A DNA stretch of 64,000 bases from Corallochytrium limacisporum Hawaii. Lineage: Eukaryota > Protista > Pluriformea. Positions 1 through 15,160 of this stretch are shown in pieces. The translations under genes were made by a program, and so were the position numbers. Location of the stretch: the NCBI GenBank assembly GCA_002811645.1, contig PDIP01000030.1, positions 32,514 through 96,513 on the forward strand. The letters run 5' to 3'. The notes beneath the pieces were generated by a model, which saw only the letters and a list, made by a program, of their open reading frames with translations, ran no database searches and had not been told where the DNA came from. Position 1 is the stretch's first letter, and each line of letters opens with the position of its first letter.

Positions 1-994
1 ATAAATTAACCTACAATCAAGATTGAAAAAGATCCTCGGGAGTCAAGTTTTTCGGAGTTTTGACCCTGACATACCAGACAGAGGGTGGTACCACTATCGT
101 CGTGCTCAGGTTGCGTTCTCATGTGTGAGCGCCGTTTGAGTACGTCGTTCAGTCGCCCGGTGCACAGGTCTGCTTGAGAGTGGTGTGTGGTTGGGTCCCA
201 GTATTTGCCCATCCCGACTGCCAGAAAAGAATTTACTGTCACTGCGATTTCAGACTGTACTATGCACTCAAAGAGGCACTGCATGGAACAAAAGTACTGT
301 GAAAATTTTCTTCTCTGCTCACTGCAAAAATCACGCGATTTCAATTGATATAGAACATAACAGCTTCCCTGCGCCCAAGCAAAACATAAGAATGGAATGT
401 AACCCAATATCCTTATCGCCGCACCTCCTGCCCACGCAAGTTTCCGAATCAGGTACAGCAAACCTGCATTGTGAGCGCTCATATCCACACTCTTCCGTGC
501 ACGCAGGCGGTCTAGCGTTCCCTTGAATATGTGATTCCACAGTTCTCCACGCGCACACTATCCAGCCCCGACCGTGCGCTAAATTCTGAAGACCAGTGCG
601 AGTTGCTTGCTTGTCTCCTTTTGGGGGTGTCCGAAACTGCTACACTATGTGCCACTTTTGTATCTCATCAAAGCCCAGTCCGTTTTTTGCATTCGGGGTC
701 CGATCTGTCTTTCCTTTCTCTCCGCCATTTCCATCAGCGTGCTGTCGGTGTACTGGCGATCAGTGTACTGCGGTGTTCTCCATGTCCTGCTCGGTGGGGT
801 TTGTAGCGGTGGCCGGCCTTGGGCCGTGCCTGTGTTCCGTGTCCGTACAAACCGTCGCACCCGTCCCTACGTCCAAAGGAACAAGAAGAAAGACGCCTGG
901 TGCGGGAAGGCAGTGTTCACGGACGGCGGTCAATTTTCTCTGCCTGTTTCGTCTGTTTGTCTGCTTGTCGGTGCGTGGTTCTCGCCCCGCCCCC

Positions 995-1009
995 GGGGGG
1001 GGGGGGGGG
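995..1009 (+). promoter_or_regulatory. poly-G tract (CCCC-G15) ~150 nt upstream of the M20 gene
   Basis: 15 consecutive G preceded by ccccgccccc; similar tracts precede SEH1, UBE2V and the patatin-like gene on their sense strands. Confidence 0.45.
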
Positions 1010-1162
1010 AGTGGGCTGAGAGCGGCTACTTCCAAGAGGACAAAGCCAGCAGACCCCCTGTGCACTGACAACACTGATATAGCGTTCTTCCCGTACAGAA
1101 CGATCTTGTACCACCCCGATTGCTGCGGGCAGCACGTACGTGTGGTATGTTCAGTAGGAACC

Positions 1163-2299
1163 ATGGACATTGACGTTCAGCAGTTCATGGACGAACTAAA
1201 GGAGTTGATTGAGATACCTTCCGCAACCAAGGACGTTGCCGCGTGTGAGAAAACCCTGGACTGGGTTGAGCAATACTTTGGGTCAACAGAGTATACGTAC
1301 TCAAGGCAGCGCGAGTATGATGATGCCAATCCAATCCTCTACGTGAAGCCCAAAAATTGGCGAGGAGATGAGGAAGTTGGTCCTCGGTGTCTGCTCCTTG
1401 TGCACCTGGATGTTGTGCCAATGGAGGCTGGGTACGCCATGAGTGAAAAGGATAACATTCTTTATGGTCGAGGCGTGTCAGATATGAAAGGGCCTGGCCT
1501 AATTCTCATGGACATCATGCGGCGCATGAAGAATCCAGAAATCCATCTTTTGGTCGTAACAGATGAGGAAACGGGTGGTAACATGGGTGCAAAGTGGTGT
1601 TTTGAGACACGAGAAAATGGTGGCCTGGGTTTGACATGTCGAATCTGTATTTGCCCTGATGGAGGTGATGGAGACAATGTAGTCATTGCTGAAAAGGGCG
1701 TATTGCGCGTCAACATCCGCGCCGAGGGCAAATCGGCCCACAGTGCATATCCGTGGCTCGGTGACAACGCAATCGACAAACTTATGGCTGCCTTGCGTCT
1801 GGTGGAAGGGATGTCGGACTTTAATCAGTACTCTGAGGATAACAAATGGTTTACTACGTTGCAGGTTACGAAGATTGCTGGCGGAACGGCCATAAATCAA
1901 GTTCCTGGCAGTGCATCCGCCGATTGCGACATTCGTTATACAGAGCAATGGACGGCCACGAGCCTGCGGGAGCACATCACCACGAAACTGAAGGAAGCAT
2001 TCGGTGATACCATCAAAGTATCGTCCATCTTTGAACAGCCCATGCTCAACATTGACAAGGAGTCGGTCTATGTTAAGATCGGATGCGACGTGATTCGGGA
2101 AATAGTTGGAAAAGAACCCGAACTCCTCAAAGGTAATGGCACTAGTGACGGACACTGGGCCCCGTTCCCGGTGATAATGACGAAACCGACGGGAGGTGGA
2201 TTGCACCAACACTCTGAGTGGGTAGATAAACTGTCGCTGCTGGGCAGCCATAAGGTGTTTGCAGAGATAATCAAACGGTACGTTGCCGTGGAACAATAG
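1163..2299 (+). CDS. M20/M25/M40 family metallohydrolase (DapE/ArgE-like), 378 aa
   Basis: Motifs HLDVVP, YGRGVSDMKG, TDEETGG, PDGG, AEKG, GKSAHSAYPWLGDNAI, GTSDG, GGGLH..SEWV. ATG at 1163 (MDIDVQQF) chosen because the in-frame upstream part of the 596 ORF crosses the poly-G tract and is not protein-like. Confidence 0.9.
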   Translation: MDIDVQQFMDELKELIEIPSATKDVAACEKTLDWVEQYFGSTEYTYSRQREYDDANPILYVKPKNWRGDEEVGPRCLLLVHLDVVPMEAGYAMSEKDNILYGRGVSDMKGPGLILMDIMRRMKNPEIHLLVVTDEETGGNMGAKWCFETRENGGLGLTCRICICPDGGDGDNVVIAEKGVLRVNIRAEGKSAHSAYPWLGDNAIDKLMAALRLVEGMSDFNQYSEDNKWFTTLQVTKIAGGTAINQVPGSASADCDIRYTEQWTATSLREHITTKLKEAFGDTIKVSSIFEQPMLNIDKESVYVKIGCDVIREIVGKEPELLKGNGTSDGHWAPFPVIMTKPTGGGLHQHSEWVDKLSLLGSHKVFAEIIKRYVAVEQ

Positions 2300-2400: not shown

Positions 2401-5400
2401 TCATGAATTGTCCCGTTCTTGCTGTGGCGCGTTCATCTCAGCAAAGAGATGGGACACCTCCTCGGCTGACAAGATAGACAGCAACTGGCCAATTATGTTC
2501 AGTGCAGTGTGCCTCTGGCCTCGTACCGCCTCCACGAGTTCACTCACGCGTTTATCCCTCTCGTGCTCTTCCAGACGGGCAATCAGGCGGCCCTGGCGTG
2601 ACTCCAGCCAGGTAGCAACCATCTTGTTGTCATCCCACATGGGAATAGGCTCCTCCTCAACCATCCTGAACTCCACGACCCACCGTCGCAGAATGACTTC
2701 GGCCTGACGCAGATCCATGCCAGGCGTCTCCGATCGCTGAATCCTTCGTTTGATCTGCAACTCAATGATGGCGCGTCGGAAATGCCAGTAGAAGAAGTGG
2801 CGGGCCTCAGCCCATGGTACTAAAGCAGACACCGCGTTCTTTTCATTCATACGTAGCGCCGTGTCGTGAAGGTCTGCAAAGGCCACTGCAGCCTGGCGAA
2901 TTCCCAGCTCTCGCTCGTGTTCCGGCGCATTGGGAGCAATTGTATCTGCCGTCCGCCTGCGCAGGGCATCGAAGTCGCGCTCCTTGAATTTAATTTGGAT
3001 GGTGTTCTCCGGTTCGAGGATACCACCGCGGCTAGTGGGATCAGCGAAGAGTGAGCTCATCTCCGGATTGATGGCGGGATCAACTACGACCCAGGCACCG
3101 CCCCTGAGATCGCTCTTTGGAGGGATGTACGATGCGACGGGGTTCTTGTAGTCCTTCAGCGCGTTCACAATGTCCACTGAATACTTCAGAACCTCATCAT
3201 ACATATCCCGCGTACCCCCAGCAAAGCCCTTCCAGTTCGCCATAATGAACAGGGGCAGGTTCTCCTTATCAAAATCACGAATGGCCTGGGCCATCTTAGA
3301 CGCTGAGGAGGCAAACAAAATCGATCCACTCATGTGGCTGACAATAACCTCAGAGTCGGGATTCGCAGGATCAGCAGGTAATTTGAACTCCACGGGCCGT
3401 TTTTCTACTGTTATGATAGCCACAGGGATGCCACCGAGGGTAGCACGGCCTACAATCACATTTTGCGCCCACCCGCTCATGATCTCTTGGAATGAGTACT
3501 TGTCGAACACACCAGAAACACGGTCCGCTTCGGGGATCATGGATCCAGGCCCGCTGTAGTCTCCGACGATGAGCTTGCGCGGGTCATACGGAACGTCGTC
3601 CTCCGGGACTTCGAAAGTCACGGGGCGGTTCACGGGGTCCAGCTCCAGATGCACAGGCGGCATCTGAGACGAGGTTAATGGAATATAGCTTAGCCAACGC
3701 AGCGCAGAAATGACAGCTTCGTAGTCATTCTGGGCAACTAGGGAAGTCACTCCGTTGGCTTCCATGATGTGTGTGCCGCCCAGTTGAGCATCGCTTGCGT
3801 AGGCATTGCGACCCAGCATGCGGTTCTGTTCCTTGGCAGCGGTCAGGATTATGTGACTGCCCTCAACCTGGATGACTCGCGATCCTAGACGAGCGAGATA
3901 TGCACCAATACCAATAGAGCGGCAACTGACAATGGTCAACGTAAAGCACTTTTTGTACGCCTCGGCCATGACCGCTGCAATTCGGGCACTGCCATGGAGG
4001 ACCTCGGCACCTAGCTGTTCGCTCTCCTTGCCGTAGATGCTAATGATTTTGTAGCGGTTCTCACCGTTTGCTTCAATAAGTTCCGCACGGACCTGATTCC
4101 GGCTGCTTAGCTGGGAGTAGTCATCTGGTGTGAGATACAGATAATCGATGCCTTCAGCAGGGTTCTGGCTATTGTTCCAACAGACACGGAAGGAGTTCAT
4201 CACATCCCTCGCCAGTCCAACCCTGGCACCACTGTTGGCTGCGAAGTAAATTACAGGTATTTCCCTTTCGATACTATAGTTTACAGCAGCGCGATAGAGC
4301 TCGTCCTCAGTTTCCGTGAAGGTACCGAGCTCGTAGGTTATGTCACTGCAGATGATAACCAGGTCCCGGCCCTGCGGGCAGTACGGCAAGTTCATGTGCA
4401 ATTTCCAGACAACGATGGAGCAGTTATTGGTGCCATGTTCGCGAGCAGTTTCACGCAGTTCCTGGTGATCATCCAGAATCATCTCTGTGGCATCTAGAAC
4501 ATTCATGGGCATGGTCACGGTGGTGTTGACTGGTGGTGCGCCACCGCCGCCCCACTGCTTCTCCAAAACCTTAAGATTTCGGTGGTAGCCGAACCATGTG
4601 TCCCTGACACCCTGACGAAACAGTTCGGGGATATCATACGCATAGGTTGTGCCACGGGATTGAGCCAGGAACCGCTTTGACTGCAAGATACCCTTGGTGT
4701 GGTAAGGTTCGATGGCAGAGTGACCATGTAAGGGGCCCTTCCTGCGACCGAGGCTCTCTAGGTAAATAATGCCTTTCTCCTCATCATACACTTCCTTGTA
4801 GACGTGAATCTCAAGTACATAACCGCTCTCGTTGTTTACAAAGAATCGAACACGCTTCTCCTGATCGTCAGGGCTGTCCCTGACGGACATACAAATTTCA
4901 GCTTTGAGAATACGCAGCTTCCACAGTCTTCGACCGTGGCGGATGATAAGTGCGCGCAGATCGGGCAGAATACTCTCTGGGTCCAGGATGACCGACGGCA
5001 CAAAGTTAAGGAAAAGATGATTGCCGTCCACTGCTGGAAATTCATTTCTGGAGATCGTCAGCTCTATCTCATCCATGGCTTCGACCATCATGCGCTCACC
5101 TTCACTGAAAAAGAATTCAACCGACGTGTTGCTGGAAATCAGATCGGCGTGGCGCACGATGCAACGCGCAAACAGACGACGATCGCGCAAACCTTCCTTA
5201 CTCACACTCTTCCTGCTCTTAGCGTCACCGTAGTATAGATGCAAACGGGGGTTGCTAGTGTTGATGAAGGACAGGTTATAGTTACTCAATCGACTAAGCT
5301 CGAGCTGGAACGCCAGTGCTGGCTCGATGTTCCGATATACCGTATCCTCTGCATAGTCGAGCCAGATGCGGAACGTAAAGTACGCAGGCATCTGCTCGTG

Positions 5401-8400
5401 TTCCAGTACCAAGAAAGTGACACGGCGGATGCCACGGCTCTGCAAAAGGGTTTTCTTGGACCTCACAAAGTCACCCAGGAGCTTTACTTTCTCGAGTTCG
5501 TTCTTCGGTTCCGGGTGGTTCGTCAATTTGACTCGGCGCAGAGCTACCACAATAGAGTTCACAAAGAGTTTTGGATCCAAGGACTCGTAGTCCTCCATTT
5601 CCTCAAAGCAATTGACGGCGCTGTTGAAGTTCACGACCACTTCATCCATAGTATCAAAGGCACAAAGACAGCCCCTGCGCTTGCGGGTGAGAGAAAACAT
5701 GCGGTCACCCTCAGCGGTGTTCCGCCCTCCATCACTGTCTCCGTACTTGGACCATGAACCTCGGCTTGAAGATGTCGAGGAGTTGCGTTTATGGCCCTTG
5801 AAATGACCATCTCTCTCTTTTCTCGATGTTAAATGGACCTCCTTTTCTTTCTTGGGTCCGAGGCGGGCCAACTCCTTCTGCTGGTCACGAATGAAGGGAT
5901 GGGACGGCGGCAGCATGTAGGCCCATTCTACCATCTTGTAGCCCACCTCGGGTGTCAAATGGTGTACACTGTGCAGAGTGTAGGCCGTGTATGCACGTCG
6001 TAAGTAGATCTCCATTGCCACCGTGCATAGCTTGAGATCTTTGTGGTAGAACAAATGACTCAGCACATCGAAGAGGGTTGTGGACTGCTTAACAAGCATT
6101 TCCAATCGGCTGCTACCTTCTTCGCCAAAGGCTTCCATGGCGCCCTTTAGATACATCTCGAGATCCATAAGACGGCGGTCGAAGCTTGGGCTGGAGGCAA
6201 TCAGAATGGCCTGTCGGGCTTTGAGTCCAACCATGGTGGAAGACTTGGAAGACAGATCAGCGAGGCGTTCCAAAAGAATCTTGATGTGTGGACTAAGGTT
6301 ATTAGAGTCGGTGGAAGTGAGAATGTCCAGCAGACGAATGGCGACAAGACTGCGCCATTTACTCTGATGATGTGCCCGAACTATACCAGTGGCGGTCTGG
6401 ATGTTCTCAGAATACTTTTCTCGCAGCAGGGCCATGACATCCTCGTTTGAGCGACTCGTCGAAGAGGTTACAAACCGATTGTGGCTTGAACGTACTTCGG
6501 GAAGGTTGCCGCGCCTTCGCTGGGCCTCGGACCACAGTTCCTCAACCTCTAGGTACTGAGTAAGGTAGGACGAAATTACAATCTTGTGATGTCCCTTCAG
6601 GCCATTACGGTACCGTTGAATAAGCTGAATGATCGGCTCCACGACAATGTAGAAGGCATCGTGCTCTGTCTTTTTCTCAATCTGGCGCGCGTAGCTATCA
6701 ATGCAGTCCGCGATTTGCTGTACCGGGAAGGTACAGAAAACGCTGCGCAAGGAAGCAGCGTAGGATTTGATAATGTCGTTGAGCTTCTTTTGGATGGAAG
6801 GAGCAATGCGACCACCCATAGCACCAACAACAGTCTGTAACTCAAGTAGCGGTAAACGTGGGTCGAGGAGGCACTTGTTCAGATGGTCAAGTGTTTCATC
6901 AATATACTCCTGGTAGACAGCTTCCGGGTACTCATAGCCATCAAAGATGTCCTTGATCGCATTTCGACAGTACTTGTACCTGTTCATTACTTTCTCATCT
7001 TCTCGCAGGGACAGGCTGAGCTCTAAAGGGAACGTTGTTTTGGTCAACACTGTCTCAGGTTGATGACTCTCCTCTTCGTCAAGTTCAATCTGCGCCAGAA
7101 CGTCACCGATGTCCACAACTGTACCCGGTGACCGGTGATGACGAAGAATACCACTGCCTGGAGCCTTCAGTGTGCTCCGCATCCGCATGGCCTCAATTTC
7201 CAGGAAAGGGTCTCCCACTGAGATCCGCTCTCCATCCTCCACCAAGTACCGCACAATCTTGCTCGGCATCTGCGCCCGACAGCATGAGGGATCGATGTCC
7301 CTATTGATCACCATGACCTTACCATCAACAGTGACGTGGACACAGTTTCCTTGCTCCTTGATGTAGCATACGTGACTGGTTTCCTTCATGATCATGAGCA
7401 TACCACCGTCATTTAGCATGTGGTACTGAATCTCAATGAATGAATCATTCAGACCCAAGACCATTCGATCTGCCGCACACTTTGTGACAGTGATGGGATA
7501 CAAGTGATGAATGGGCTCATCGTTCTCGATAATAAGGTTCACAGTTGTGTTCATGCGTAGATATTCCCAGCTGGCCATTTGACCACGTTGCATGCAACTA
7601 CCAAAGTAGTGGCTGCGCATGGTTATTTCCTTTTCGGCCAGGTGTGTGGCAGCTGCCACCAAGGCTAATGTCGGATCAGCCTTCTCTTCAGTTTCGTTCT
7701 TGCGCAGAGACAGAATGGTCTCATCCAGCCAGCCTAGAGTGACATTGTTCTGAATAAATGTCTTTGATTCCAAAAGGCTGCTGATAATCTCAGCAGTGCC
7801 CTGCATACCGTCCCGAGCACCAATTTCCCGCAGGGCTAAGACGAGGTTCCTCCGAGCTCGTTCTCGATTTTCACCCCACACAAAGATGTAGTTTTTGGAC
7901 ATGTCATCGGTGTCATCAAAAGTATTGCCCACAGTCAAGCGAGTGCCTAGCAGATCAAATGGACTCGATTCAGCAAAGCTTGGCAAGACAGACAGATTCT
8001 CTGGCCCTTCCAGAGTCATTCGGCAGAAGATAGCATGGCCATCCGCCCGTGCCTTCCGGAAAGCCTTGGGATCACCTGTACTTGGTTGGAACGGGATCTG
8101 CGACGTGCCCCAAGGGTCGGCATGATAAAGTAGACGAAGCTCCTTCATACGGTGAAGAGGGACACCCATAGCAATCTGCAGCTGCAGAGCTGGGAAGTTG
8201 ACGTGAGAGATCATTTCGTTCGCAGGATGCTCCGCCTGTAGTGCCGGGTGAACCCCTTGGAAATACGCTTTACCATCGCTGACAAGGAATGTGACCGAGC
8301 ACACCCCCTCAAAACGGGCCAGTCGCAATACTTTGCAGGCCATCTTCTCTACCTCATGTCGCAGTCGAACGCTGCGAAAGACTGCTGGGCTTTCTCCGAG

Positions 8401-9672
8401 GACTGTCTGCTGTCGGGATTGTGCACTGATATCTCGAGTGAAAATGCTGGCTACATTGTTGTAGTGGTCACAAGCCATCTGCAGCTCAATGAGCCGTGCA
8501 GCCTCATCATATGTCTCCAGGAACAAGTGACTACCCGGGTAGTCCAGTTCAATCTGATGATACAGCGATGCAAGGGCCTCCCCGTTGTCCACAACCATGT
8601 CGACACCCGGCAAGCAGCTGGGACCCTGTGCAAGGTAAACTCGCACTGGGTACTCGAGCTCTTGCGCCTGCCGCAGAGCGCTCTCTACGTCGCTAACTGC
8701 ACAATTATTGTACTGACTCCGCGATAACCAGTAGGGGTCTGCACGGTTAGTCTTCAAAGCACTGATACCATCGTCCGTATCCAGGCGGTACGGATCCGCA
8801 CTGCTGGGAGAGGTGGAGCCGTATGCACCCAAGAAGTCCACAACATCATTTGGCTTCACACGTGTACTGCTGCCACTCCAGGGCAACATGTCGATTCCCG
8901 CCCCTTGGGCAACCAATCGAGCAGTGATTGCATTCCCCAGAACCGCGAGTGTATGGTAGTGCGGCCCGAGGAAGGCAATCCCACTTTTGTGTAGCATTTC
9001 AGCGAGCTTAGGGTCCTCGCTTCCGTGTCCCCATCCGAGCCACACGGCATCTACATCGTGGTGCTCTGCGATATCAAGGATTACTTCCGCATTGGCGTAC
9101 GACTTCTGTTCTCCGCTGCTACTGGCAATGGGCACGTAGTGGTCTGCCATCTTTAGATGTTCTGAATTGCTGGCTATGTCCTCCGGCGTCGCGACTACCA
9201 CGAACTGCAAAGCTTTCTCTGTCGTAAACATTTCGTAGCTCCATTGTTTCAGCGAACGAATCGCCTTGGCTGCTGCTGTGCTGCTGTTGGCGATGAGGAT
9301 CCGACTCAATGGCCGGCGACCATCGAAGAGTTTCACAAATTCCGCCACAGAAGCCATCTTGGGTCTTTTCGTCTCCTCTTCCGGCAAAACAGCGCCTGCT
9401 TGAATGGAAGTACCTAAAATGCTGGGGTCTGTGTTAAAACTCTGCCTGGTTGATGTCTGCATTTGGCTAAAATTGGAGGTTGTACTCGAGATGAGAGGTG
9501 AGTAGCTGTAGATGGCTGAGCTATCCCGCTTACGCTGCGCTTCATTGGAAGACGGACCAGGTGTATCCACCCACTTCTCATCCTCATCGATCCTGCTGGT
9601 GCCTTGATCTGTAGTGCTCCTGCTGCCCCGGTTCCCGCCCGATGGGATGGCAATGGGCCTTGAGGGCTTCAT
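2401..9672 (-). CDS. ACC: Full-length multidomain acetyl-CoA carboxylase-like protein (BC-BT-BCCP-central-CT), apparently catalytically inactive
   Basis: Uninterrupted ORF, first ATG at 9672. ACC hallmarks throughout: VAEFVKLFDG, WLGWGHGSEDP, ALQLQIAMGVPL, LLDPRLPLLEL, YRNIEPALAFQLELSRL, TTYAYD, ANSGARVGLA, IGIGAYLARLG, PADPANPDS, LRGGAWVVVD, FADLHDT. Biotin motif is EAMRM and BC catalytic motifs are degenerate. Confidence 0.95.
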   Translation of the reverse strand: MKPSRPIAIPSGGNRGSRSTTDQGTSRIDEDEKWVDTPGPSSNEAQRKRDSSAIYSYSPLISSTTSNFSQMQTSTRQSFNTDPSILGTSIQAGAVLPEEETKRPKMASVAEFVKLFDGRRPLSRILIANSSTAAAKAIRSLKQWSYEMFTTEKALQFVVVATPEDIASNSEHLKMADHYVPIASSSGEQKSYANAEVILDIAEHHDVDAVWLGWGHGSEDPKLAEMLHKSGIAFLGPHYHTLAVLGNAITARLVAQGAGIDMLPWSGSSTRVKPNDVVDFLGAYGSTSPSSADPYRLDTDDGISALKTNRADPYWLSRSQYNNCAVSDVESALRQAQELEYPVRVYLAQGPSCLPGVDMVVDNGEALASLYHQIELDYPGSHLFLETYDEAARLIELQMACDHYNNVASIFTRDISAQSRQQTVLGESPAVFRSVRLRHEVEKMACKVLRLARFEGVCSVTFLVSDGKAYFQGVHPALQAEHPANEMISHVNFPALQLQIAMGVPLHRMKELRLLYHADPWGTSQIPFQPSTGDPKAFRKARADGHAIFCRMTLEGPENLSVLPSFAESSPFDLLGTRLTVGNTFDDTDDMSKNYIFVWGENRERARRNLVLALREIGARDGMQGTAEIISSLLESKTFIQNNVTLGWLDETILSLRKNETEEKADPTLALVAAATHLAEKEITMRSHYFGSCMQRGQMASWEYLRMNTTVNLIIENDEPIHHLYPITVTKCAADRMVLGLNDSFIEIQYHMLNDGGMLMIMKETSHVCYIKEQGNCVHVTVDGKVMVINRDIDPSCCRAQMPSKIVRYLVEDGERISVGDPFLEIEAMRMRSTLKAPGSGILRHHRSPGTVVDIGDVLAQIELDEEESHQPETVLTKTTFPLELSLSLREDEKVMNRYKYCRNAIKDIFDGYEYPEAVYQEYIDETLDHLNKCLLDPRLPLLELQTVVGAMGGRIAPSIQKKLNDIIKSYAASLRSVFCTFPVQQIADCIDSYARQIEKKTEHDAFYIVVEPIIQLIQRYRNGLKGHHKIVISSYLTQYLEVEELWSEAQRRRGNLPEVRSSHNRFVTSSTSRSNEDVMALLREKYSENIQTATGIVRAHHQSKWRSLVAIRLLDILTSTDSNNLSPHIKILLERLADLSSKSSTMVGLKARQAILIASSPSFDRRLMDLEMYLKGAMEAFGEEGSSRLEMLVKQSTTLFDVLSHLFYHKDLKLCTVAMEIYLRRAYTAYTLHSVHHLTPEVGYKMVEWAYMLPPSHPFIRDQQKELARLGPKKEKEVHLTSRKERDGHFKGHKRNSSTSSSRGSWSKYGDSDGGRNTAEGDRMFSLTRKRRGCLCAFDTMDEVVVNFNSAVNCFEEMEDYESLDPKLFVNSIVVALRRVKLTNHPEPKNELEKVKLLGDFVRSKKTLLQSRGIRRVTFLVLEHEQMPAYFTFRIWLDYAEDTVYRNIEPALAFQLELSRLSNYNLSFINTSNPRLHLYYGDAKSRKSVSKEGLRDRRLFARCIVRHADLISSNTSVEFFFSEGERMMVEAMDEIELTISRNEFPAVDGNHLFLNFVPSVILDPESILPDLRALIIRHGRRLWKLRILKAEICMSVRDSPDDQEKRVRFFVNNESGYVLEIHVYKEVYDEEKGIIYLESLGRRKGPLHGHSAIEPYHTKGILQSKRFLAQSRGTTYAYDIPELFRQGVRDTWFGYHRNLKVLEKQWGGGGAPPVNTTVTMPMNVLDATEMILDDHQELRETAREHGTNNCSIVVWKLHMNLPYCPQGRDLVIICSDITYELGTFTETEDELYRAAVNYSIEREIPVIYFAANSGARVGLARDVMNSFRVCWNNSQNPAEGIDYLYLTPDDYSQLSSRNQVRAELIEANGENRYKIISIYGKESEQLGAEVLHGSARIAAVMAEAYKKCFTLTIVSCRSIGIGAYLARLGSRVIQVEGSHIILTAAKEQNRMLGRNAYASDAQLGGTHIMEANGVTSLVAQNDYEAVISALRWLSYIPLTSSQMPPVHLELDPVNRPVTFEVPEDDVPYDPRKLIVGDYSGPGSMIPEADRVSGVFDKYSFQEIMSGWAQNVIVGRATLGGIPVAIITVEKRPVEFKLPADPANPDSEVIVSHMSGSILFASSASKMAQAIRDFDKENLPLFIMANWKGFAGGTRDMYDEVLKYSVDIVNALKDYKNPVASYIPPKSDLRGGAWVVVDPAINPEMSSLFADPTSRGGILEPENTIQIKFKERDFDALRRRTADTIAPNAPEHERELGIRQAAVAFADLHDTALRMNEKNAVSALVPWAEARHFFYWHFRRAIIELQIKRRIQRSETPGMDLRQAEVILRRWVVEFRMVEEEPIPMWDDNKMVATWLESRQGRLIARLEEHERDKRVSELVEAVRGQRHTALNIIGQLLSILSAEEVSHLFAEMNAPQQERDNS

Positions 9673-10744
9673 GTCTTCTTTCTTCGTCAATGATTCAGTA
9701 TTTCTGTGGTTTATGGTTCAGATCACATAGTATGTCTTGCGTACATTGATGCCGTAGAGTGTAACTGTTGTTTAGATCCCTACAACCAGTGCTACATGTC
9801 GGCGCAATTACACACTCGTTGGTGCTATGTAGTCTCCACTATGCGCAGCTCCCACTCACGGGCGCTATGGTGAGACCCTCCCCCAAAAATACCCACCCTA
9901 CCAATCCCCCTCAACAACATCCCTCCGCGTTTCACTCCGTCCAGTTACTAGTTCCCCCTTTGTGCGGTCTCGTGGACTGTTCTGGGTTTGCATATTCTTA
10001 TTGTCATGAGTCGGAGCCTCTGAGTTACCGGTGGATCAAAAGGTTGGGAGGGGTATCATGGAGCAACCAACAAACCCAGTCCCCAGAAATCCACACAGGA
10101 GTGCGCAGCAAACAAGAAGACCCGGGTCCCCACCCACACTCTGCTGATGATGCGGTCCAGGGTGGCTGCTGAAGCCACGGCTGTTTCGGAGTCCCCAATT
10201 TTTTTGGCCCGTTTGCATCCGGTGTGTGAGAATCGTCCGAACTGTTGCTTTTGGGGCGCAGTCAGTATTTTAGTTTTGGGGAGCACAGGTCCTCAGCTGC
10301 AAATGACAGCGCACCCTGAAATAAACGAGTGATAGCCAGCGGAGGTGCAAAAAAAATTCTCCAGCAGTGTCGTTTGCGATTGCTCAGCTGCAGTGGTCAA
10401 TGTATTGTAGTTTGATGGGGTGGGAGCAGAGACTACGCCAAATATAGCAAGAACCGGCTGCTGAGTCTCTGAAACCCCCTTGCTCTCTCTGAGTTGTGGT
10501 GTGCGACTGGGCTTAAGTCATCGAATTCAAATGTCAACCCCGTTTGTGGACACAACAGGATTATACGCCGTGCCGGGTAGGCCGACCGACGTCACGGACG
10601 AATTTTGCCGGTTCCGTTCGCTGCATTTCCAGGACACATTTGGCAAGGGTGTTCCGGTGCAATTCATATAGTTTCCTTGCGTTTGCTGATTGAAGAAAGT
10701 TACTTTTGCTACCGTATTTTTTTTTCTCCCTTCAAGTGATATAT

Positions 10745-13700
10745 TTATTGTTGGCTAAGATACCACCACTGTAGGGTAGTGTACTCTGGATGGTAGCGAA
10801 CCCCGGAATAAACGAATGAGCCACGGTGGCTTGCATTCTCTTGGCCAGGGGCGAAGGACATACTTTCCACGTCCGCTCTGGACGGTGCTTGTGATGCATC
10901 CGCGCCTTGCAGTGATTCAGTGGTTTCTGACTTCTCGTTGTCCACTACAGGAGCCAGAGTGGTTGCACCCTCTTCGATGGGTTCTTCCACTAACTCTGCA
11001 GGCAGCGGGAAGATGTCCGGTCCGCAAACCGCCACCATGGCCCTCCGGAACAGTGCATGATCAGTCATGACTTCCTGAATCTGTGCTTCAATGGTGGAAA
11101 CAGCTACCACACCGCTACTGATCCATCGCGCGGTGCGTAGACTGTTCAGATAGTAATTTACATCGAGATCATCACCACTCACATGCAAATTGGCCAATAT
11201 CGCCCCGGTTCGGTGCAGGAATCTCATGCACGGGGGAACAATTGGGACGGCAATCAATGGACTGGTCTGCGGAATGCCCGCAATTACTTTGCCAATGCAG
11301 TCGTTGCGATTGTCAAAGTCAAGTAAGAAATTTCCGTCATCAGCAAGGATGCGTGTCAATACTTGCACCTTCTCTTCCATAGTCAGCACTCTGGCAGGCG
11401 GAGCATATTCCGTGGCATTCAAATCCAGCGGCGGCGCATAGGCAAGGCCAGAGGTCCAGGCTGGAGACCATTTCCTCATTGTCCTAAAGGGAGACGAGTC
11501 GTTCATGGTAGGTGACTCTGCATTGTAATCAACCACAGGGGTTGATGGTATTGGCATGATCGGAAACCCGAGCTGATGCGCTCTTCTTTGCAGACCTTGC
11601 ACCAGGTCATCCACTGTGGATGCCATCGTGGTCAACCAGTGGAACTCAAAGTGAAAGGCTGTGTTGACAGCAAACACACTATCATACCAAAGGATAAACC
11701 AAGGAGATCCATCGTCGACCATGCCCTCGGCATCCATTCCTTTGGCATCCAATCCGTGCAAGGAGATCATTGCCCACTTGTCCAAAATTGGCTTTGATGT
11801 GATTGGCACACTTAGACTGGCCACAGGCAGCGGCCTTCTCAGGTCGCGCTTCCAAATGGCATTCAATGGGGATACCGCCAGGGTGAAGATCTTGCAGTCA
11901 TCCGAGAATGTCTTCTCCGGCCCAGTGTGCTCGATCACCTGCTTGTTCAACAATTCTGTGGCAAAGAGAATTGCATCCTTCCGCTTGGGAACGTCTTCAA
12001 AACTTTGTAAAATCCAGTTGATCAGGGAAAAGCCGAAGAAGTAAGGCTTTGCGTCCTTATCATGATCGTATGTGAAGATGGGGAGGATTCCTGTGGAATC
12101 CGACATCATCGTGTAGACCAAGTGGTGACACTCCGTCTCCATTGACAATTTTGATTGCTGGTTCCTAGTCATATTCTTGGCTGCTTCTGGTGTCGTCGGC
12201 TTTTTCAGCGGCAGTTTTATAAAACAGTCTTGAGCAATCATGATCTTAAGATTGACCTCACTGGGCACATCTGCCAAACCCGATTTCGGAGATCCGTACG
12301 ACTGAAACTTTTCGGAGAACTTGACATAGTTGTTCAAGACCTCCTCAAAGTCAGAAATAGTAGTCAAAGTTGATTGCTTCTCGTCAGACACCTGCATCTT
12401 CGCAAAGCGACTTCGCCAGATTTTGATACCACCACTGCTTTCGTCCACAGGCATGCTGAGATTTCCAATGATCAACTGATCAATGTAGTTCCACTGATGA
12501 TCCATATGCGGCTCGTGAATGAATTTCGCCTTTCGCAGGGTGTTGTGGCTGGCAGATCCAATCAGTGAGTATGTATAGTCTTGGCTTATTGGATCCATGT
12601 GCAGAGATCTTGCTCTCTGTGAGACAGGTCCCGTCATGACAGTATCAGACGCGCTCCCGCGTGAGTATCGTTTGACGTCGATTAGTTCACCATCTCTAGA
12701 GATGATATGATAAATGCGGCCAAAGGACAAGCGAAATCTCTCGGATGACTCTATACCACTCTTTCGCCGACCTCCACCACTTGCTAAAGGGTACTCCCTT
12801 TGCGAGAACTGCGATGATCCTGTGGACATAATTAGTTGAAAGCCTTGGGCCAGTCGTTGGGATACCAGCGCCCTCATCGCAAGATCCGTAATCGCAACCT
12901 TTGACTTCTCCTTGCTGATGCTGTCGAGGACAGCAGGGTATAAAGTGTAGTTGTGTTCATTAAACTTCCCATGGAGGTCGCCGGCGTCCGGGAAGTAATC
13001 TGTTGTAATGGGCAAACAAGCCGGTTCACAAAGTGCGTCCCAGTTGGGACCAGTGTGTTCGTATCCGAATACCCATTTCACGTTAGGTGTCAAATGGGCC
13101 CAACGTCTCCGGTTAGCAGTCATTTTCTGGCGATTGGCACCTATCTGGAATGGATTGAATCTGTCCGTCTGCTGTGCTTGTTTTGCATTATGATCCATGG
13201 CCGCTGCGAGACCGAGGTCCATCATTGACGATGAACTAATGCTGTGCGAGTGAATCCGTCCCGCTAATGTGTCACTCTTGTGGCTTAGGCCAAGCCGATC
13301 ACCACCAAACGACGACCGGCTCGCATGCGACATGGGAATGTCAATCGGAATACCCATAATCGACGTCTCTTCTTCTGTAGCAGTTACAGAGTGCCCAGAA
13401 CCCTCTCCACCGACAATGGACGGGGATTCATCAGACATTTCCGACAAGTGATCCTCGTCCATGGCCTTCCTTATGGCAGGCAGCCTATCTAGAAGTCGAG
13501 TACTGCGCAAAGGTGAGAGCGAAGCTCCTTGGGAGAAGTGACGCTCCCTGCGCATCCGTGCTTGATTTACGCTGGCAAGTTTTTCTCTCAAGGCATGACT
13601 ACGCCGTGATGACGAGAATACACTGCGGTCATAGGATTCCATTTGGGACCATCCAAGATGGTCGGCAACCACGTTCTCTTCATCTTCACCGCCAGGGTTT

Positions 13701-15160
13701 TCGGGACAATGTTGGCACCGTTTATCTTCTGCCATGGATATAAACCGATATGGTTCCATACCTAGACCATTTGAACTGCCATCAGGGATCAAGAGATCCA
13801 ACCGGCTAGAACCGACTGGAATGAAACACTGCCGGTTGATAAGCCAGTCCCTATAGAAGATCATGTAGATCCAGTCAGGTGATGAGTATGTCGGTGCGCC
13901 CTTGCCTGACCCATCAGAATGTGACACGGGCTCATCGAGGTGGATAAAGAGCGGAATGGCATGCAGAGGAGGCATAGCAACCGAGATGAAATCACAAACT
14001 ATGCCATGGTCAATCATGCGCCTTTTGGTCATCCTTGCGAGCTGTGGCTGCACTTCAAAGACACCAGAATTGGCCGAGATGCAAATGTAGAGCTGACCTG
14101 TACGATCAAGGTTGCGATCGAGTCGATGGCGCTCAAACACATTCAAACCCAGGTTGATTGCTTCGAGAAAGTTACTGCTTCTTGCTGCACAGAGCCTTCC
14201 AAGTCTCTTCCCGTCCGCAGATCTTCTGTGTGCCTTCTTGTAGAACCCGTTGATGGACGTACGCATGGACGCAATGAATTCAACCACATTCAAGGTGCTC
14301 GATTCGAGTTCACACGCCATATGATATATATCTTCATAGAACATCTCGGCAAGCGCACCGCCTTTGAGAAATTTCGTAGCTCTAAGGGCCGTCCTGTCAT
14401 CTATCATTTCATTTGCTTCATCTTTTGTGTAGTGTATCCGACCAGTCAGGATGAAGGACACGTGATGGTTAACGCCAGCATCGAGCCATTTTGTGACCAA
14501 TTCTTTCAGTGCACAATCGAGGACCTTCTCCAGATAGGTATCACCGTCATACGCATAGTCCTGCAGTTCGGACGACATTTGGACCATAACAAAGACTCTA
14601 GCCGTACCAGACCTATACACCACGTTGGTCTCTTCAGTGAGGATTCCGGTGTGAATACTCGTATTGTCTTTCCACAACTCTCGTACAGAGGCATGGATGC
14701 CGTTGATCACAATGGTTTTCCCAACATACAATGCAGAAGATCTCAATTCCCGCTTGAAACGCCACATGTCACCTCGTCCAATATACTGATCTCGGAATGA
14801 AACACTGACCAAGTGGACGCTGTATGAAGCTTCATCTACGATCACAACATTGACATCGCTTCGCATACCGAAGCCAAATTGTTCTGCAAGGTTCCGTTCC
14901 ATCGACACCTGGAAGGAAGATCCCTTTAGCGTCTTTGAGTCCGCAACTAAGGCCTTCAGGACGAGATACTTAGAGCCAGTTCTAGATTTCACCAAAGAAA
15001 TCCTCGCAAAACAATCTGTGAAGGCGTTAGGCATCATTTCCCCGTTGATGACAAATTCGTAGCCTTTGAACTGAGACGCCTCATGGTGCCACAAGCGTAC
15101 TGATGAGGACCGGCCTATGCGGGTGACCCCTCGGCGCGACCTTAGGTCGGCTCCACTCAT
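10745..15160 (-). CDS. DEPDC5: GATOR1 subunit DEPDC5/Iml1, 1471 aa
   Basis: FRDQYIGRGDMWRF, VQMSSEL, NFLEAINLGLNVF, DRNLDRTGQ, PPLHAIPLF, NRRRWAH, W..LCEPACLPITTDYFP, LVSQRLAQGFQLI, and a DEP-like segment FFGFSLINWI. Confidence 0.95.
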   Translation of the reverse strand: MSGADLRSRRGVTRIGRSSSVRLWHHEASQFKGYEFVINGEMMPNAFTDCFARISLVKSRTGSKYLVLKALVADSKTLKGSSFQVSMERNLAEQFGFGMRSDVNVVIVDEASYSVHLVSVSFRDQYIGRGDMWRFKRELRSSALYVGKTIVINGIHASVRELWKDNTSIHTGILTEETNVVYRSGTARVFVMVQMSSELQDYAYDGDTYLEKVLDCALKELVTKWLDAGVNHHVSFILTGRIHYTKDEANEMIDDRTALRATKFLKGGALAEMFYEDIYHMACELESSTLNVVEFIASMRTSINGFYKKAHRRSADGKRLGRLCAARSSNFLEAINLGLNVFERHRLDRNLDRTGQLYICISANSGVFEVQPQLARMTKRRMIDHGIVCDFISVAMPPLHAIPLFIHLDEPVSHSDGSGKGAPTYSSPDWIYMIFYRDWLINRQCFIPVGSSRLDLLIPDGSSNGLGMEPYRFISMAEDKRCQHCPENPGGEDEENVVADHLGWSQMESYDRSVFSSSRRSHALREKLASVNQARMRRERHFSQGASLSPLRSTRLLDRLPAIRKAMDEDHLSEMSDESPSIVGGEGSGHSVTATEEETSIMGIPIDIPMSHASRSSFGGDRLGLSHKSDTLAGRIHSHSISSSSMMDLGLAAAMDHNAKQAQQTDRFNPFQIGANRQKMTANRRRWAHLTPNVKWVFGYEHTGPNWDALCEPACLPITTDYFPDAGDLHGKFNEHNYTLYPAVLDSISKEKSKVAITDLAMRALVSQRLAQGFQLIMSTGSSQFSQREYPLASGGGRRKSGIESSERFRLSFGRIYHIISRDGELIDVKRYSRGSASDTVMTGPVSQRARSLHMDPISQDYTYSLIGSASHNTLRKAKFIHEPHMDHQWNYIDQLIIGNLSMPVDESSGGIKIWRSRFAKMQVSDEKQSTLTTISDFEEVLNNYVKFSEKFQSYGSPKSGLADVPSEVNLKIMIAQDCFIKLPLKKPTTPEAAKNMTRNQQSKLSMETECHHLVYTMMSDSTGILPIFTYDHDKDAKPYFFGFSLINWILQSFEDVPKRKDAILFATELLNKQVIEHTGPEKTFSDDCKIFTLAVSPLNAIWKRDLRRPLPVASLSVPITSKPILDKWAMISLHGLDAKGMDAEGMVDDGSPWFILWYDSVFAVNTAFHFEFHWLTTMASTVDDLVQGLQRRAHQLGFPIMPIPSTPVVDYNAESPTMNDSSPFRTMRKWSPAWTSGLAYAPPLDLNATEYAPPARVLTMEEKVQVLTRILADDGNFLLDFDNRNDCIGKVIAGIPQTSPLIAVPIVPPCMRFLHRTGAILANLHVSGDDLDVNYYLNSLRTARWISSGVVAVSTIEAQIQEVMTDHALFRRAMVAVCGPDIFPLPAELVEEPIEEGATTLAPVVDNEKSETTESLQGADASQAPSRADVESMSFAPGQENASHRGSFVYSGVRYHPEYTTLQWWYLSQQ

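What the first reader, a model, noticed from the sequence alone, without database searches (positions are those of the whole stretch)
7177..7200. Full-length ACC whose biotin-acceptor lysine is replaced by arginine: an apparent ACC pseudoenzyme
Seen: the BCCP domain reads PFLEIEAMRMRSTL, with CGG (Arg) at 7185-7183 where E-[AV]-M-K-M has the biotinylated Lys. CGG differs from AAG at two positions, so one base-call error cannot explain it. Established: biotin protein ligase attaches biotin to this lysine, and without it there is no carboxyl shuttling. The ~2,420-codon ORF has no stop or frameshift and keeps every domain, which argues for selection on a non-catalytic role. Inference: a dead ACC paralogue that regulates, scaffolds or co-polymerises with an active ACC, like the prozyme partners of some trypanosome enzymes. 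I do not know of a described pseudo-ACC.
Basis: partly seen in the sequence, partly recalled or inferred. Interest (0 to 1): 0.92.

Follow-up and report, generated by a model that had tools for sequence, protein, structure and literature searches.

The report
Dead full-length acetyl-CoA carboxylase paralogue
A single-celled relative of animals keeps, beside its normal fat-synthesis enzyme acetyl-CoA carboxylase, a second full-size copy that has lost the parts needed for the first half of the reaction but is still preserved by selection, so it probably regulates or partners the working enzyme.

Summary
Confirmed, and larger than reported. ORF 2401-9690(-) of Corallochytrium limacisporum encodes a 2,423-aa ACC whose biotin lysine is Arg (CGG, 7185-7183), also in two further sequencing datasets. 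The biotin carboxylase site is dismantled too: 12 of 18 catalytic or carrier positions are lost (ATP lysines, P-loop, both Mg glutamates), and the BC dimer sheet is degenerate. It cannot carboxylate on its own. A second ACC with all 18 positions lies on another contig. The dead copy is apparently transcribed and under purifying selection between two isolates (10 synonymous, 4 conservative changes; pN/pS 0.12-0.16, P about 0.001 or less). Its central domain, phospho-loop pocket and CoA-side CT lobe are as conserved as in the active copy; whether CT is active is unresolved. Best reading: a pseudoenzyme that co-assembles with and probably damps the active ACC; the interaction is inferred, not shown. 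No orthologue was found. Separately degenerated ACC copies occur in three fly-like contigs. No description of a full-length pseudo-ACC was found in the paper library; the closest precedent is plant BADC. Earlier scan notes on it come only from this window.

The parts
2401..9672 (-). Intronless ACC-like gene, 2,423 aa from ATG 9672 (open frame reaches 9690); protein P0001
7711..9306 (-). Biotin carboxylase domain: fold kept, catalytic site lost (59 of 106 invariant columns kept against 102 of 106 in the active copy)
8926..8940 (-). LGNAI in place of LGDKI: ATP-binding Lys lost
8605..8643 (-). ATP lysine and glycine-rich P-loop destroyed (RVYLAQGPSCLPG for MIKASEGGGGKG)
8404..8436 (-). RDISAQSRQQT for RDCSVQRRHQK: Arg and the Lys equivalent to E. 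coli K238 lost
   Evidence: E. coli number from own knowledge
8227..8301 (-). Both Mg-ADP glutamates lost (E467T, E479G), plus N481H and R483A; the bicarbonate base E487 is kept
   Evidence: roles from PMC11077971
7888..7977 (-). BC dimer-interface sheet (the NVWGYFSV to FADSQFGH region) degenerate; predicted disordered here, ordered in the active copy
   Evidence: assignment of this segment to the dimer interface is own knowledge
7306..7677 (-). BT domain, retained
7078..7293 (-). BCCP domain, fold retained, non-biotinylatable
7183..7185 (-). Arg codon CGG at the biotin-lysine position
4726..7002 (-). Central domain; CD-C2 better conserved (43% mean identity to five reference ACCs) than in the active copy (32%)
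5749..5799 (-). Ser-rich loop at the yeast S1157 position, ending in S-W-S as in the active copy; the phosphate-pocket Tyr and Arg residues align as retained
   Evidence: pocket residues from PMC5126230
2596..4698 (-). Carboxyltransferase domain: CoA-side motifs and both oxyanion-hole glycine motifs kept; biotin side altered (R2154K = human R2047, S2157A = S2050, G1951A = G1850, W2126L)

Best explanation
A catalytically disabled, selectively maintained ACC paralogue that acts as a non-catalytic partner of the intact ACC (Clim_evm41s144), most likely as a brake. SHOWN from sequence plus established chemistry: it cannot be biotinylated at the canonical site and cannot run the ATP-dependent BC step; it is an old, open, apparently transcribed gene under purifying selection; an intact ACC, a biotin ligase and a fungal-type FAS are in the genome. 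INFERRED: it joins the active ACC through the surfaces it has kept, the CT dimer interface and/or the central domain that builds ACC filaments. Eukaryotic BC is active only as a dimer, and this copy has lost the dimer sheet, so a mixed dimer would leave the active BC unpaired and lower malonyl-CoA output. The retained CoA pocket and phospho-loop would let acyl-CoA level or a kinase set how much of the complex forms.
For: 12 of 18 catalytic or carrier columns lost against 0 of 18 in the paralogue. Loss is concentrated: BC 59/106 invariant columns kept versus CT 83/97, P = 3e-6. Identity to reference ACCs falls far below the active copy's in BC-B/C (36 vs 62%), BC C-terminus (34 vs 53%), BCCP (38 vs 59%) and less so CT-C (49 vs 60%), but not in the central subdomains, BT, BC-A or CT-N. 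pN/pS 0.12-0.16 between isolates. BC dimer sheet pLDDT under 50 versus ordered in the control model. BC dimer requirement and CD-mediated filaments. Non-biotinylated BCCP homologues regulate plant ACCase.
Against: No interaction, localisation or protein evidence. The two paralogues are only about 21-47% identical by domain, so mixed dimers need co-adapted surfaces that I could not model. The direction of effect is uncertain: BADCs are reported both as inhibitors and as assembly factors. Only 14 SNPs support the selection estimate. No orthologue was found to show conservation across species.
Confidence: 0.5

Rival explanations
1. A half-enzyme: the CT domain is still active and works in trans. 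In a mixed CT dimer, its intact CoA-binding N-lobe pairs with the active copy's biotin-binding C-lobe to give one competent site; or it takes carboxybiotin from the active ACC's BCCP in a higher oligomer. It would then be a supporting or activating subunit.
For: NSGARVG, RSIGIGAY and LRGGAW motifs kept; of the seven biotin endo-site residues listed, five are identical, one is R to K and one V to I (the active copy also has I). CT-N identity is close to the active copy's (46 vs 49%). CT sites form between protomers.
Against: 14 invariant CT columns changed against 2 in the active copy, including the human R2047, S2050 and G1850 positions and the QVW tryptophan. The partner BC would still lack a dimer mate.
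Confidence: 0.2
2. A stand-alone acyl-CoA sensor or scaffold that homodimerises through CT, binds acetyl- or malonyl-CoA and signals to other partners, as the pseudoenzyme CPT1C does with malonyl-CoA, without binding the active ACC.
For: CoA-side motifs retained; CD-C2 more conserved than in the active copy, suggesting a conserved partner surface stayed with this copy; low identity between the paralogues; best trees put this copy with the Chromosphaera ACC. CPT1C precedent: PMC6927751 abstract.
Against: Does not explain well why the BC, BT and BCCP folds (about 770 aa) are kept intact; no partner is identified.
Confidence: 0.2
3. A neofunctionalised biotin-independent enzyme, for example a malonyl-CoA decarboxylase using the CT crotonase-type site, like bacterial MdcD/MdcE (own knowledge).
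For: Both oxyanion-hole glycine motifs kept while the biotin pocket is remodelled.
Against: The genome already has a canonical malonyl-CoA decarboxylase; retention of the whole BC and central region is unexplained.
Confidence: 0.07
4. A functionless decaying duplicate or an assembly artefact.
For: Long terminal branch (1.2-2.2 changes per column); known from one species only.
Against: Same codon in two more datasets; pN/pS 0.12-0.16; 3.7% of single-base changes would make a stop, yet 2,423 codons stay open after two thirds of catalytic columns changed; decay is domain-specific.
Confidence: 0.03

Closest known systems
Eukaryotic single-chain ACC (human ACC1, yeast Acc1; PDB 6G2D, 8XKZ, 5CSL)
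   Same: Domain order BC-BT-BCCP-CD-CT, length and predicted fold; about 36% identity over BC-BCCP to vertebrate ACC1 and 42% overall to the Chromosphaera ACC.
   Different: No biotin lysine, no ATP or Mg ligands, no P-loop, degenerate BC dimer sheet, altered CT biotin side.
Plant BADC1-3
   Same: Homologue of an ACC component that lacks the biotinylation motif and sits beside active ACCase.
   Different: BADCs are small BCCP-only subunits of the heteromeric plastid enzyme with demonstrated binding; this is a whole 270-kDa homomeric-type chain with BC also dead, and binding is untested.
Trypanosomatid prozymes (AdoMetDC prozyme and similar; own knowledge)
   Same: Diverged, catalytically dead full-length paralogue kept beside an active copy in a protist.
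   Different: Prozymes activate through heterodimers; here the BC interface needed for activation has decayed, and no interaction is shown.
CPT1C
   Same: Lipid-metabolism pseudoenzyme proposed to sense malonyl-CoA.
   Different: Unrelated fold; only a functional analogy.

Membership tests
Eukaryotic single-chain ACC (homology) | BC-BT-BCCP-central-CT architecture in one chain | tested here: met
   Pfam, PDB sequence and fold matches
Active ACC | E-x-M-K-M biotin lysine | tested here: not met
   EAMRM
Active ACC | BC ATP lysines, P-loop, two Mg glutamates, N-P-R motif | tested here: not met
   11 of 17 BC columns lost
Active ACC | BC dimer-interface sheet | tested here: not met
   Sequence degenerate; low confidence in the model against an ordered control; model evidence is indirect
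Active ACC | CT CoA pocket and oxyanion-hole glycine motifs | tested here: met
Active ACC | CT biotin endo- and exo-sites | tested here: inconclusive
   Five of seven endo-site residues identical; R2047 to K, S2050 to A, G1850 to A
Pseudoenzyme | Fold kept, catalytic residues lost | tested here: met
   (BC and BCCP)
Pseudoenzyme | Expressed and under purifying selection | tested here: met
   the runs are judged RNA by inference, not by record
Pseudoenzyme | Measured lack of activity | not testable with these tools
   needs assay
Prozyme- or BADC-type regulator | Active paralogue in the same genome | tested here: met
Prozyme- or BADC-type regulator | Binds the active enzyme and changes its activity | not testable with these tools
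   no complex prediction or interaction data available
BADC | Small BCCP-only plastid subunit of heteromeric ACCase | tested here: not met
   2,423-aa multidomain chain

The most novel reading that the evidence does not exclude
Full-length pseudo-ACCs are a recurrent, undescribed way of controlling fatty-acid synthesis: they arose separately in Corallochytrium and in a fly lineage and act as built-in subunits of ACC dimers or filaments that sense acyl-CoA or phosphorylation and switch the active enzyme. In Corallochytrium the dead copy may be the inherited holozoan orthologue, kept for its non-catalytic role.
Probability: 0.3. Interest if true: 0.88.

Novelty: new variant of a known kind. Interest (0 to 1): 0.74.

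Why it matters
ACC is the committed step of fatty-acid synthesis and a drug and herbicide target; its control by BC dimer dissociation and filament assembly is an open structural question. A natural full-length copy that lost BC chemistry and the BC dimer sheet but kept the central and CT surfaces separates ACC's catalytic from its structural roles. It marks which surfaces matter without catalysis, makes mixed-dimer and filament-poisoning models testable, and may be a natural dominant-negative tool. A second origin in flies would show this is a repeatable route. The limit: function is inferred and the Corallochytrium gene is known from one species.

Tried and rejected
Sequencing error: rejected. 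Recent pseudogene: rejected. Sole ACC with an alternative lysine: rejected, an intact ACC exists and BC is dead anyway. Orthologue search: the word-index search gave only ordinary vertebrate ACC1 at 36%, and the best 150 of the 50%-cluster library held no close relative; both have stated limits, so absence is not proven. Origin of the pair: trees place the dead copy with Chromosphaera (SH-aLRT 95-99) and LG+G4 rejects a sister relation with the active copy (p-AU 0.020), but the site-mixture model does not (p-AU 0.155), and the two copies share the most rare residues and an S-W-S loop motif; I therefore do not claim replacement by a foreign ACC. The first tree run timed out. The fly-like proteins could not be assigned to a species. 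Paper searches found no pseudo-ACC and nothing on Corallochytrium ACC or FAS; three papers recalled by id were not held, so several E. coli residue numbers rest on own knowledge.

Full report
Observation. The minus strand at 7200-7177 reads EIEAMRMR with CGG at 7185-7183, inside an uninterrupted frame 2401-9690 (ATG at 9672, 2,423 aa). Pfam finds BC, BT, BCCP, ACC central and CT domains in ACC order. The Arg aligns with human ACC1 K786, the biotinylated residue (10.1101/2024.06.16.599241); changing the equivalent lysine abolishes biotinylation in a bacterial BC-BCCP (PMC11077971). All 239 other full-length ACCs from two searches have MKM. Two 2015 datasets each cover 3210-9209 in one contig with the same codon. 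They are listed as RNA by guess only. Their size (13 Mb in 10-17 thousand records, against a 24-Mb genome) and contig ends computed to lie 44 and 157 bases upstream of the ATG fit transcripts; this is inference. X1 is identical and may share the strain; X4 is a different sample.

Organism and active paralogue. The genome has exactly two ACC central-domain genes. The other, G000:C173, has EVMKM and every BC and CT motif and is EukProt Clim_evm41s144, which identifies the organism as Corallochytrium limacisporum. A biotin-ligase family gene, a fungal-type single-chain FAS and a canonical malonyl-CoA decarboxylase are present, so ordinary lipogenesis does not need the window's gene.

The damage goes beyond the lysine. 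Of 18 catalytic or carrier columns, each 93-100% conserved in 120-145 diverse ACCs, the window's protein has lost 12 and the paralogue none: both ATP lysines, the glycine-rich loop, both Mg-ADP glutamates (roles), the Asn and Arg of the ELNPR motif, the Arg and Lys of QRRHQK, and the biotin lysine. The bicarbonate-base Glu and the biotin-binding Arg remain. Of columns at least 95% invariant in 70 diverse full-length ACCs it keeps 59/106 in BC, 7/9 in BCCP, 39/44 in CT-N and 44/53 in CT-C; the active copy keeps 102/106, 9/9, 44/44 and 51/53. BC versus CT retention differs at P = 3e-6. The segment from NVWGYFSV to FADSQFGH, which forms the BC dimer sheet (own knowledge), is unrecognisable. An AlphaFold model of BC-BT-BCCP keeps the fold (mean pLDDT 82; TM 0.91 by target length to human BC) but has pLDDT under 50 there, whereas the same segment of the active copy, modelled on the same alignment rows, is ordered. 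Eukaryotic BC is inactive as a monomer.

What is kept. Mean identity to five reference ACCs, dead versus active copy: BC-A 48/52, BC-B+C 36/62, BC C-terminus 34/53, BT 28/30, BCCP 38/59, CD-N 29/28, CD-L 33/37, CD-C1 30/30, CD-C2 43/32, CT-N 46/49, CT-C 49/60. Decay follows the chemistry; scaffold parts are kept as well as in the working enzyme. The loop at yeast S1157 is Ser-rich and both copies carry S-W-S there; the pocket residues equivalent to Y1113, R1173 and R1260 (PMC5126230) align as retained. In CT the CoA-side motifs and both glycine oxyanion motifs remain; five of the seven biotin endo-site residues listed are identical, but the human R2047 position is Lys, S2050 is Ala, G1850 is Ala and the QVW Trp is Leu. 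CT activity cannot be called from sequence.

Selection. The 14 differences in X4 are 10 synonymous and 4 conservative (V/M, L/V, V/L, I/V); pN/pS is 0.12-0.16 and P under neutrality 1e-4 to 1e-3. The sample is small. In addition, 3.7% of single-base changes would create a stop, so an open 2,423-codon frame after this much change is not compatible with long neutrality.

Relatives and origin. No close relative was found (best 36-38%). Trees place the dead copy with the Chromosphaera ACC (SH-aLRT 95-99) and leave the active copy unresolved nearby. A sister relation between the two copies is rejected under LG+G4 (p 0.020) but not under LG+C20 (p 0.155), and they share the most rare residues. An old duplication within the lineage and retention of two older copies both remain open. 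Among the best 150 cluster representatives, three proteins from Logan contigs (P0279, P0283, P0290) have degenerate BC motifs; P0279 lacks the lysine, P0283 reads ECDKE, P0290 keeps EVMKT. They form one clade next to dipteran ACCs, lie on AT-rich contigs that appear to hold introns, one with a frame break, and P0279 and P0283 give dN 0.32 and dS 2.38 (near saturation). This suggests a separate origin of a disabled ACC in flies, but gene models and species are unverified.

Mechanism. Shown: no carboxylation on its own, old, maintained, beside an active ACC. Inferred, 0.5: it co-assembles with the active ACC through CT or the central domain, which builds filaments, and, lacking the BC dimer sheet, leaves the active BC unpaired, with the CoA pocket and phospho-loop as inputs. 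Rivals: CT half-enzyme in trans 0.2, independent acyl-CoA sensor or scaffold 0.2, biotin-free decarboxylase 0.07, junk 0.03.

Comparison and novelty. It is an ACC by homology but fails the tests for an active ACC. It works like a pseudoenzyme; the nearest precedent in this pathway is plant BADC, non-biotinylated BCCP homologues reported as inhibitors or assembly factors, which differ in being small single-domain subunits. Searches of the held papers found no full-length pseudo-ACC; the library omits most subscription journals. Class: new variant of a known kind. Earlier scan notes on the BC, CT and phospho-loop come from this same window and are not independent support.

Noticed in passing
L032, L033, L034 (proteins P0279, P0283, P0290; SRR18067595, SRR18067525, SRR18067302): Fly-like clade of ACC paralogues with degenerate BC motifs, altered biotin motif (ECDNE, ECDKE) and, where seen, degenerate CT; dN/dS about 0.13 between two of them. 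Possible second origin of a pseudo-ACC; species unknown, gene models incomplete.
   Followed up: partly
P0377 and P0389 (Blastocladiella emersonii KAI9152441.1, KAI9152437.1): Two 1,177-aa ACC-like proteins with several BC catalytic changes and no aligned BCCP motif; could be pseudogenes, mis-models or another disabled ACC.
   Followed up: no
L029:2388-5828 (G000:C88): Single-chain BC-BCCP-CT acyl-CoA carboxylase of about 1,147 aa with an intact VMKM motif, bacterial long-chain type in layout.
   Followed up: partly
L037:2684-5005 (G000:C19): Extra MCC-beta-like carboxyltransferase whose C-terminal lobe looks degenerate (Pfam match ends at position 335 of 493); a possible second carboxylase-family pseudo-subunit.
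   Followed up: no
L038-L039 (G000:C191 32767-45696, minus): Fungal-type fatty acid synthase as one chain of about 4,300 aa, with two ACP-domain matches and a C-terminal phosphopantetheinyl transferase.
   Followed up: partly
window 596-2299 (+) and 10745-15160 (-): Neighbours are an M20 peptidase, convergent with only about 100 bases between the stops (the X4 contig runs into it), and DEPDC5/IML1 upstream; no sign of a lipid gene cluster.
   Followed up: no
window 5944-6464 and 8762-9025: Two 2025 marine metagenome or metatranscriptome runs hold short pieces 98-100% identical to this gene, so wild Corallochytrium carry it; depth is too low for analysis.
   Followed up: partly
L028:1304-8941: The active ACC is itself a long branch with acidic and Ser-rich insertions in BC and before CT.
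   Followed up: no
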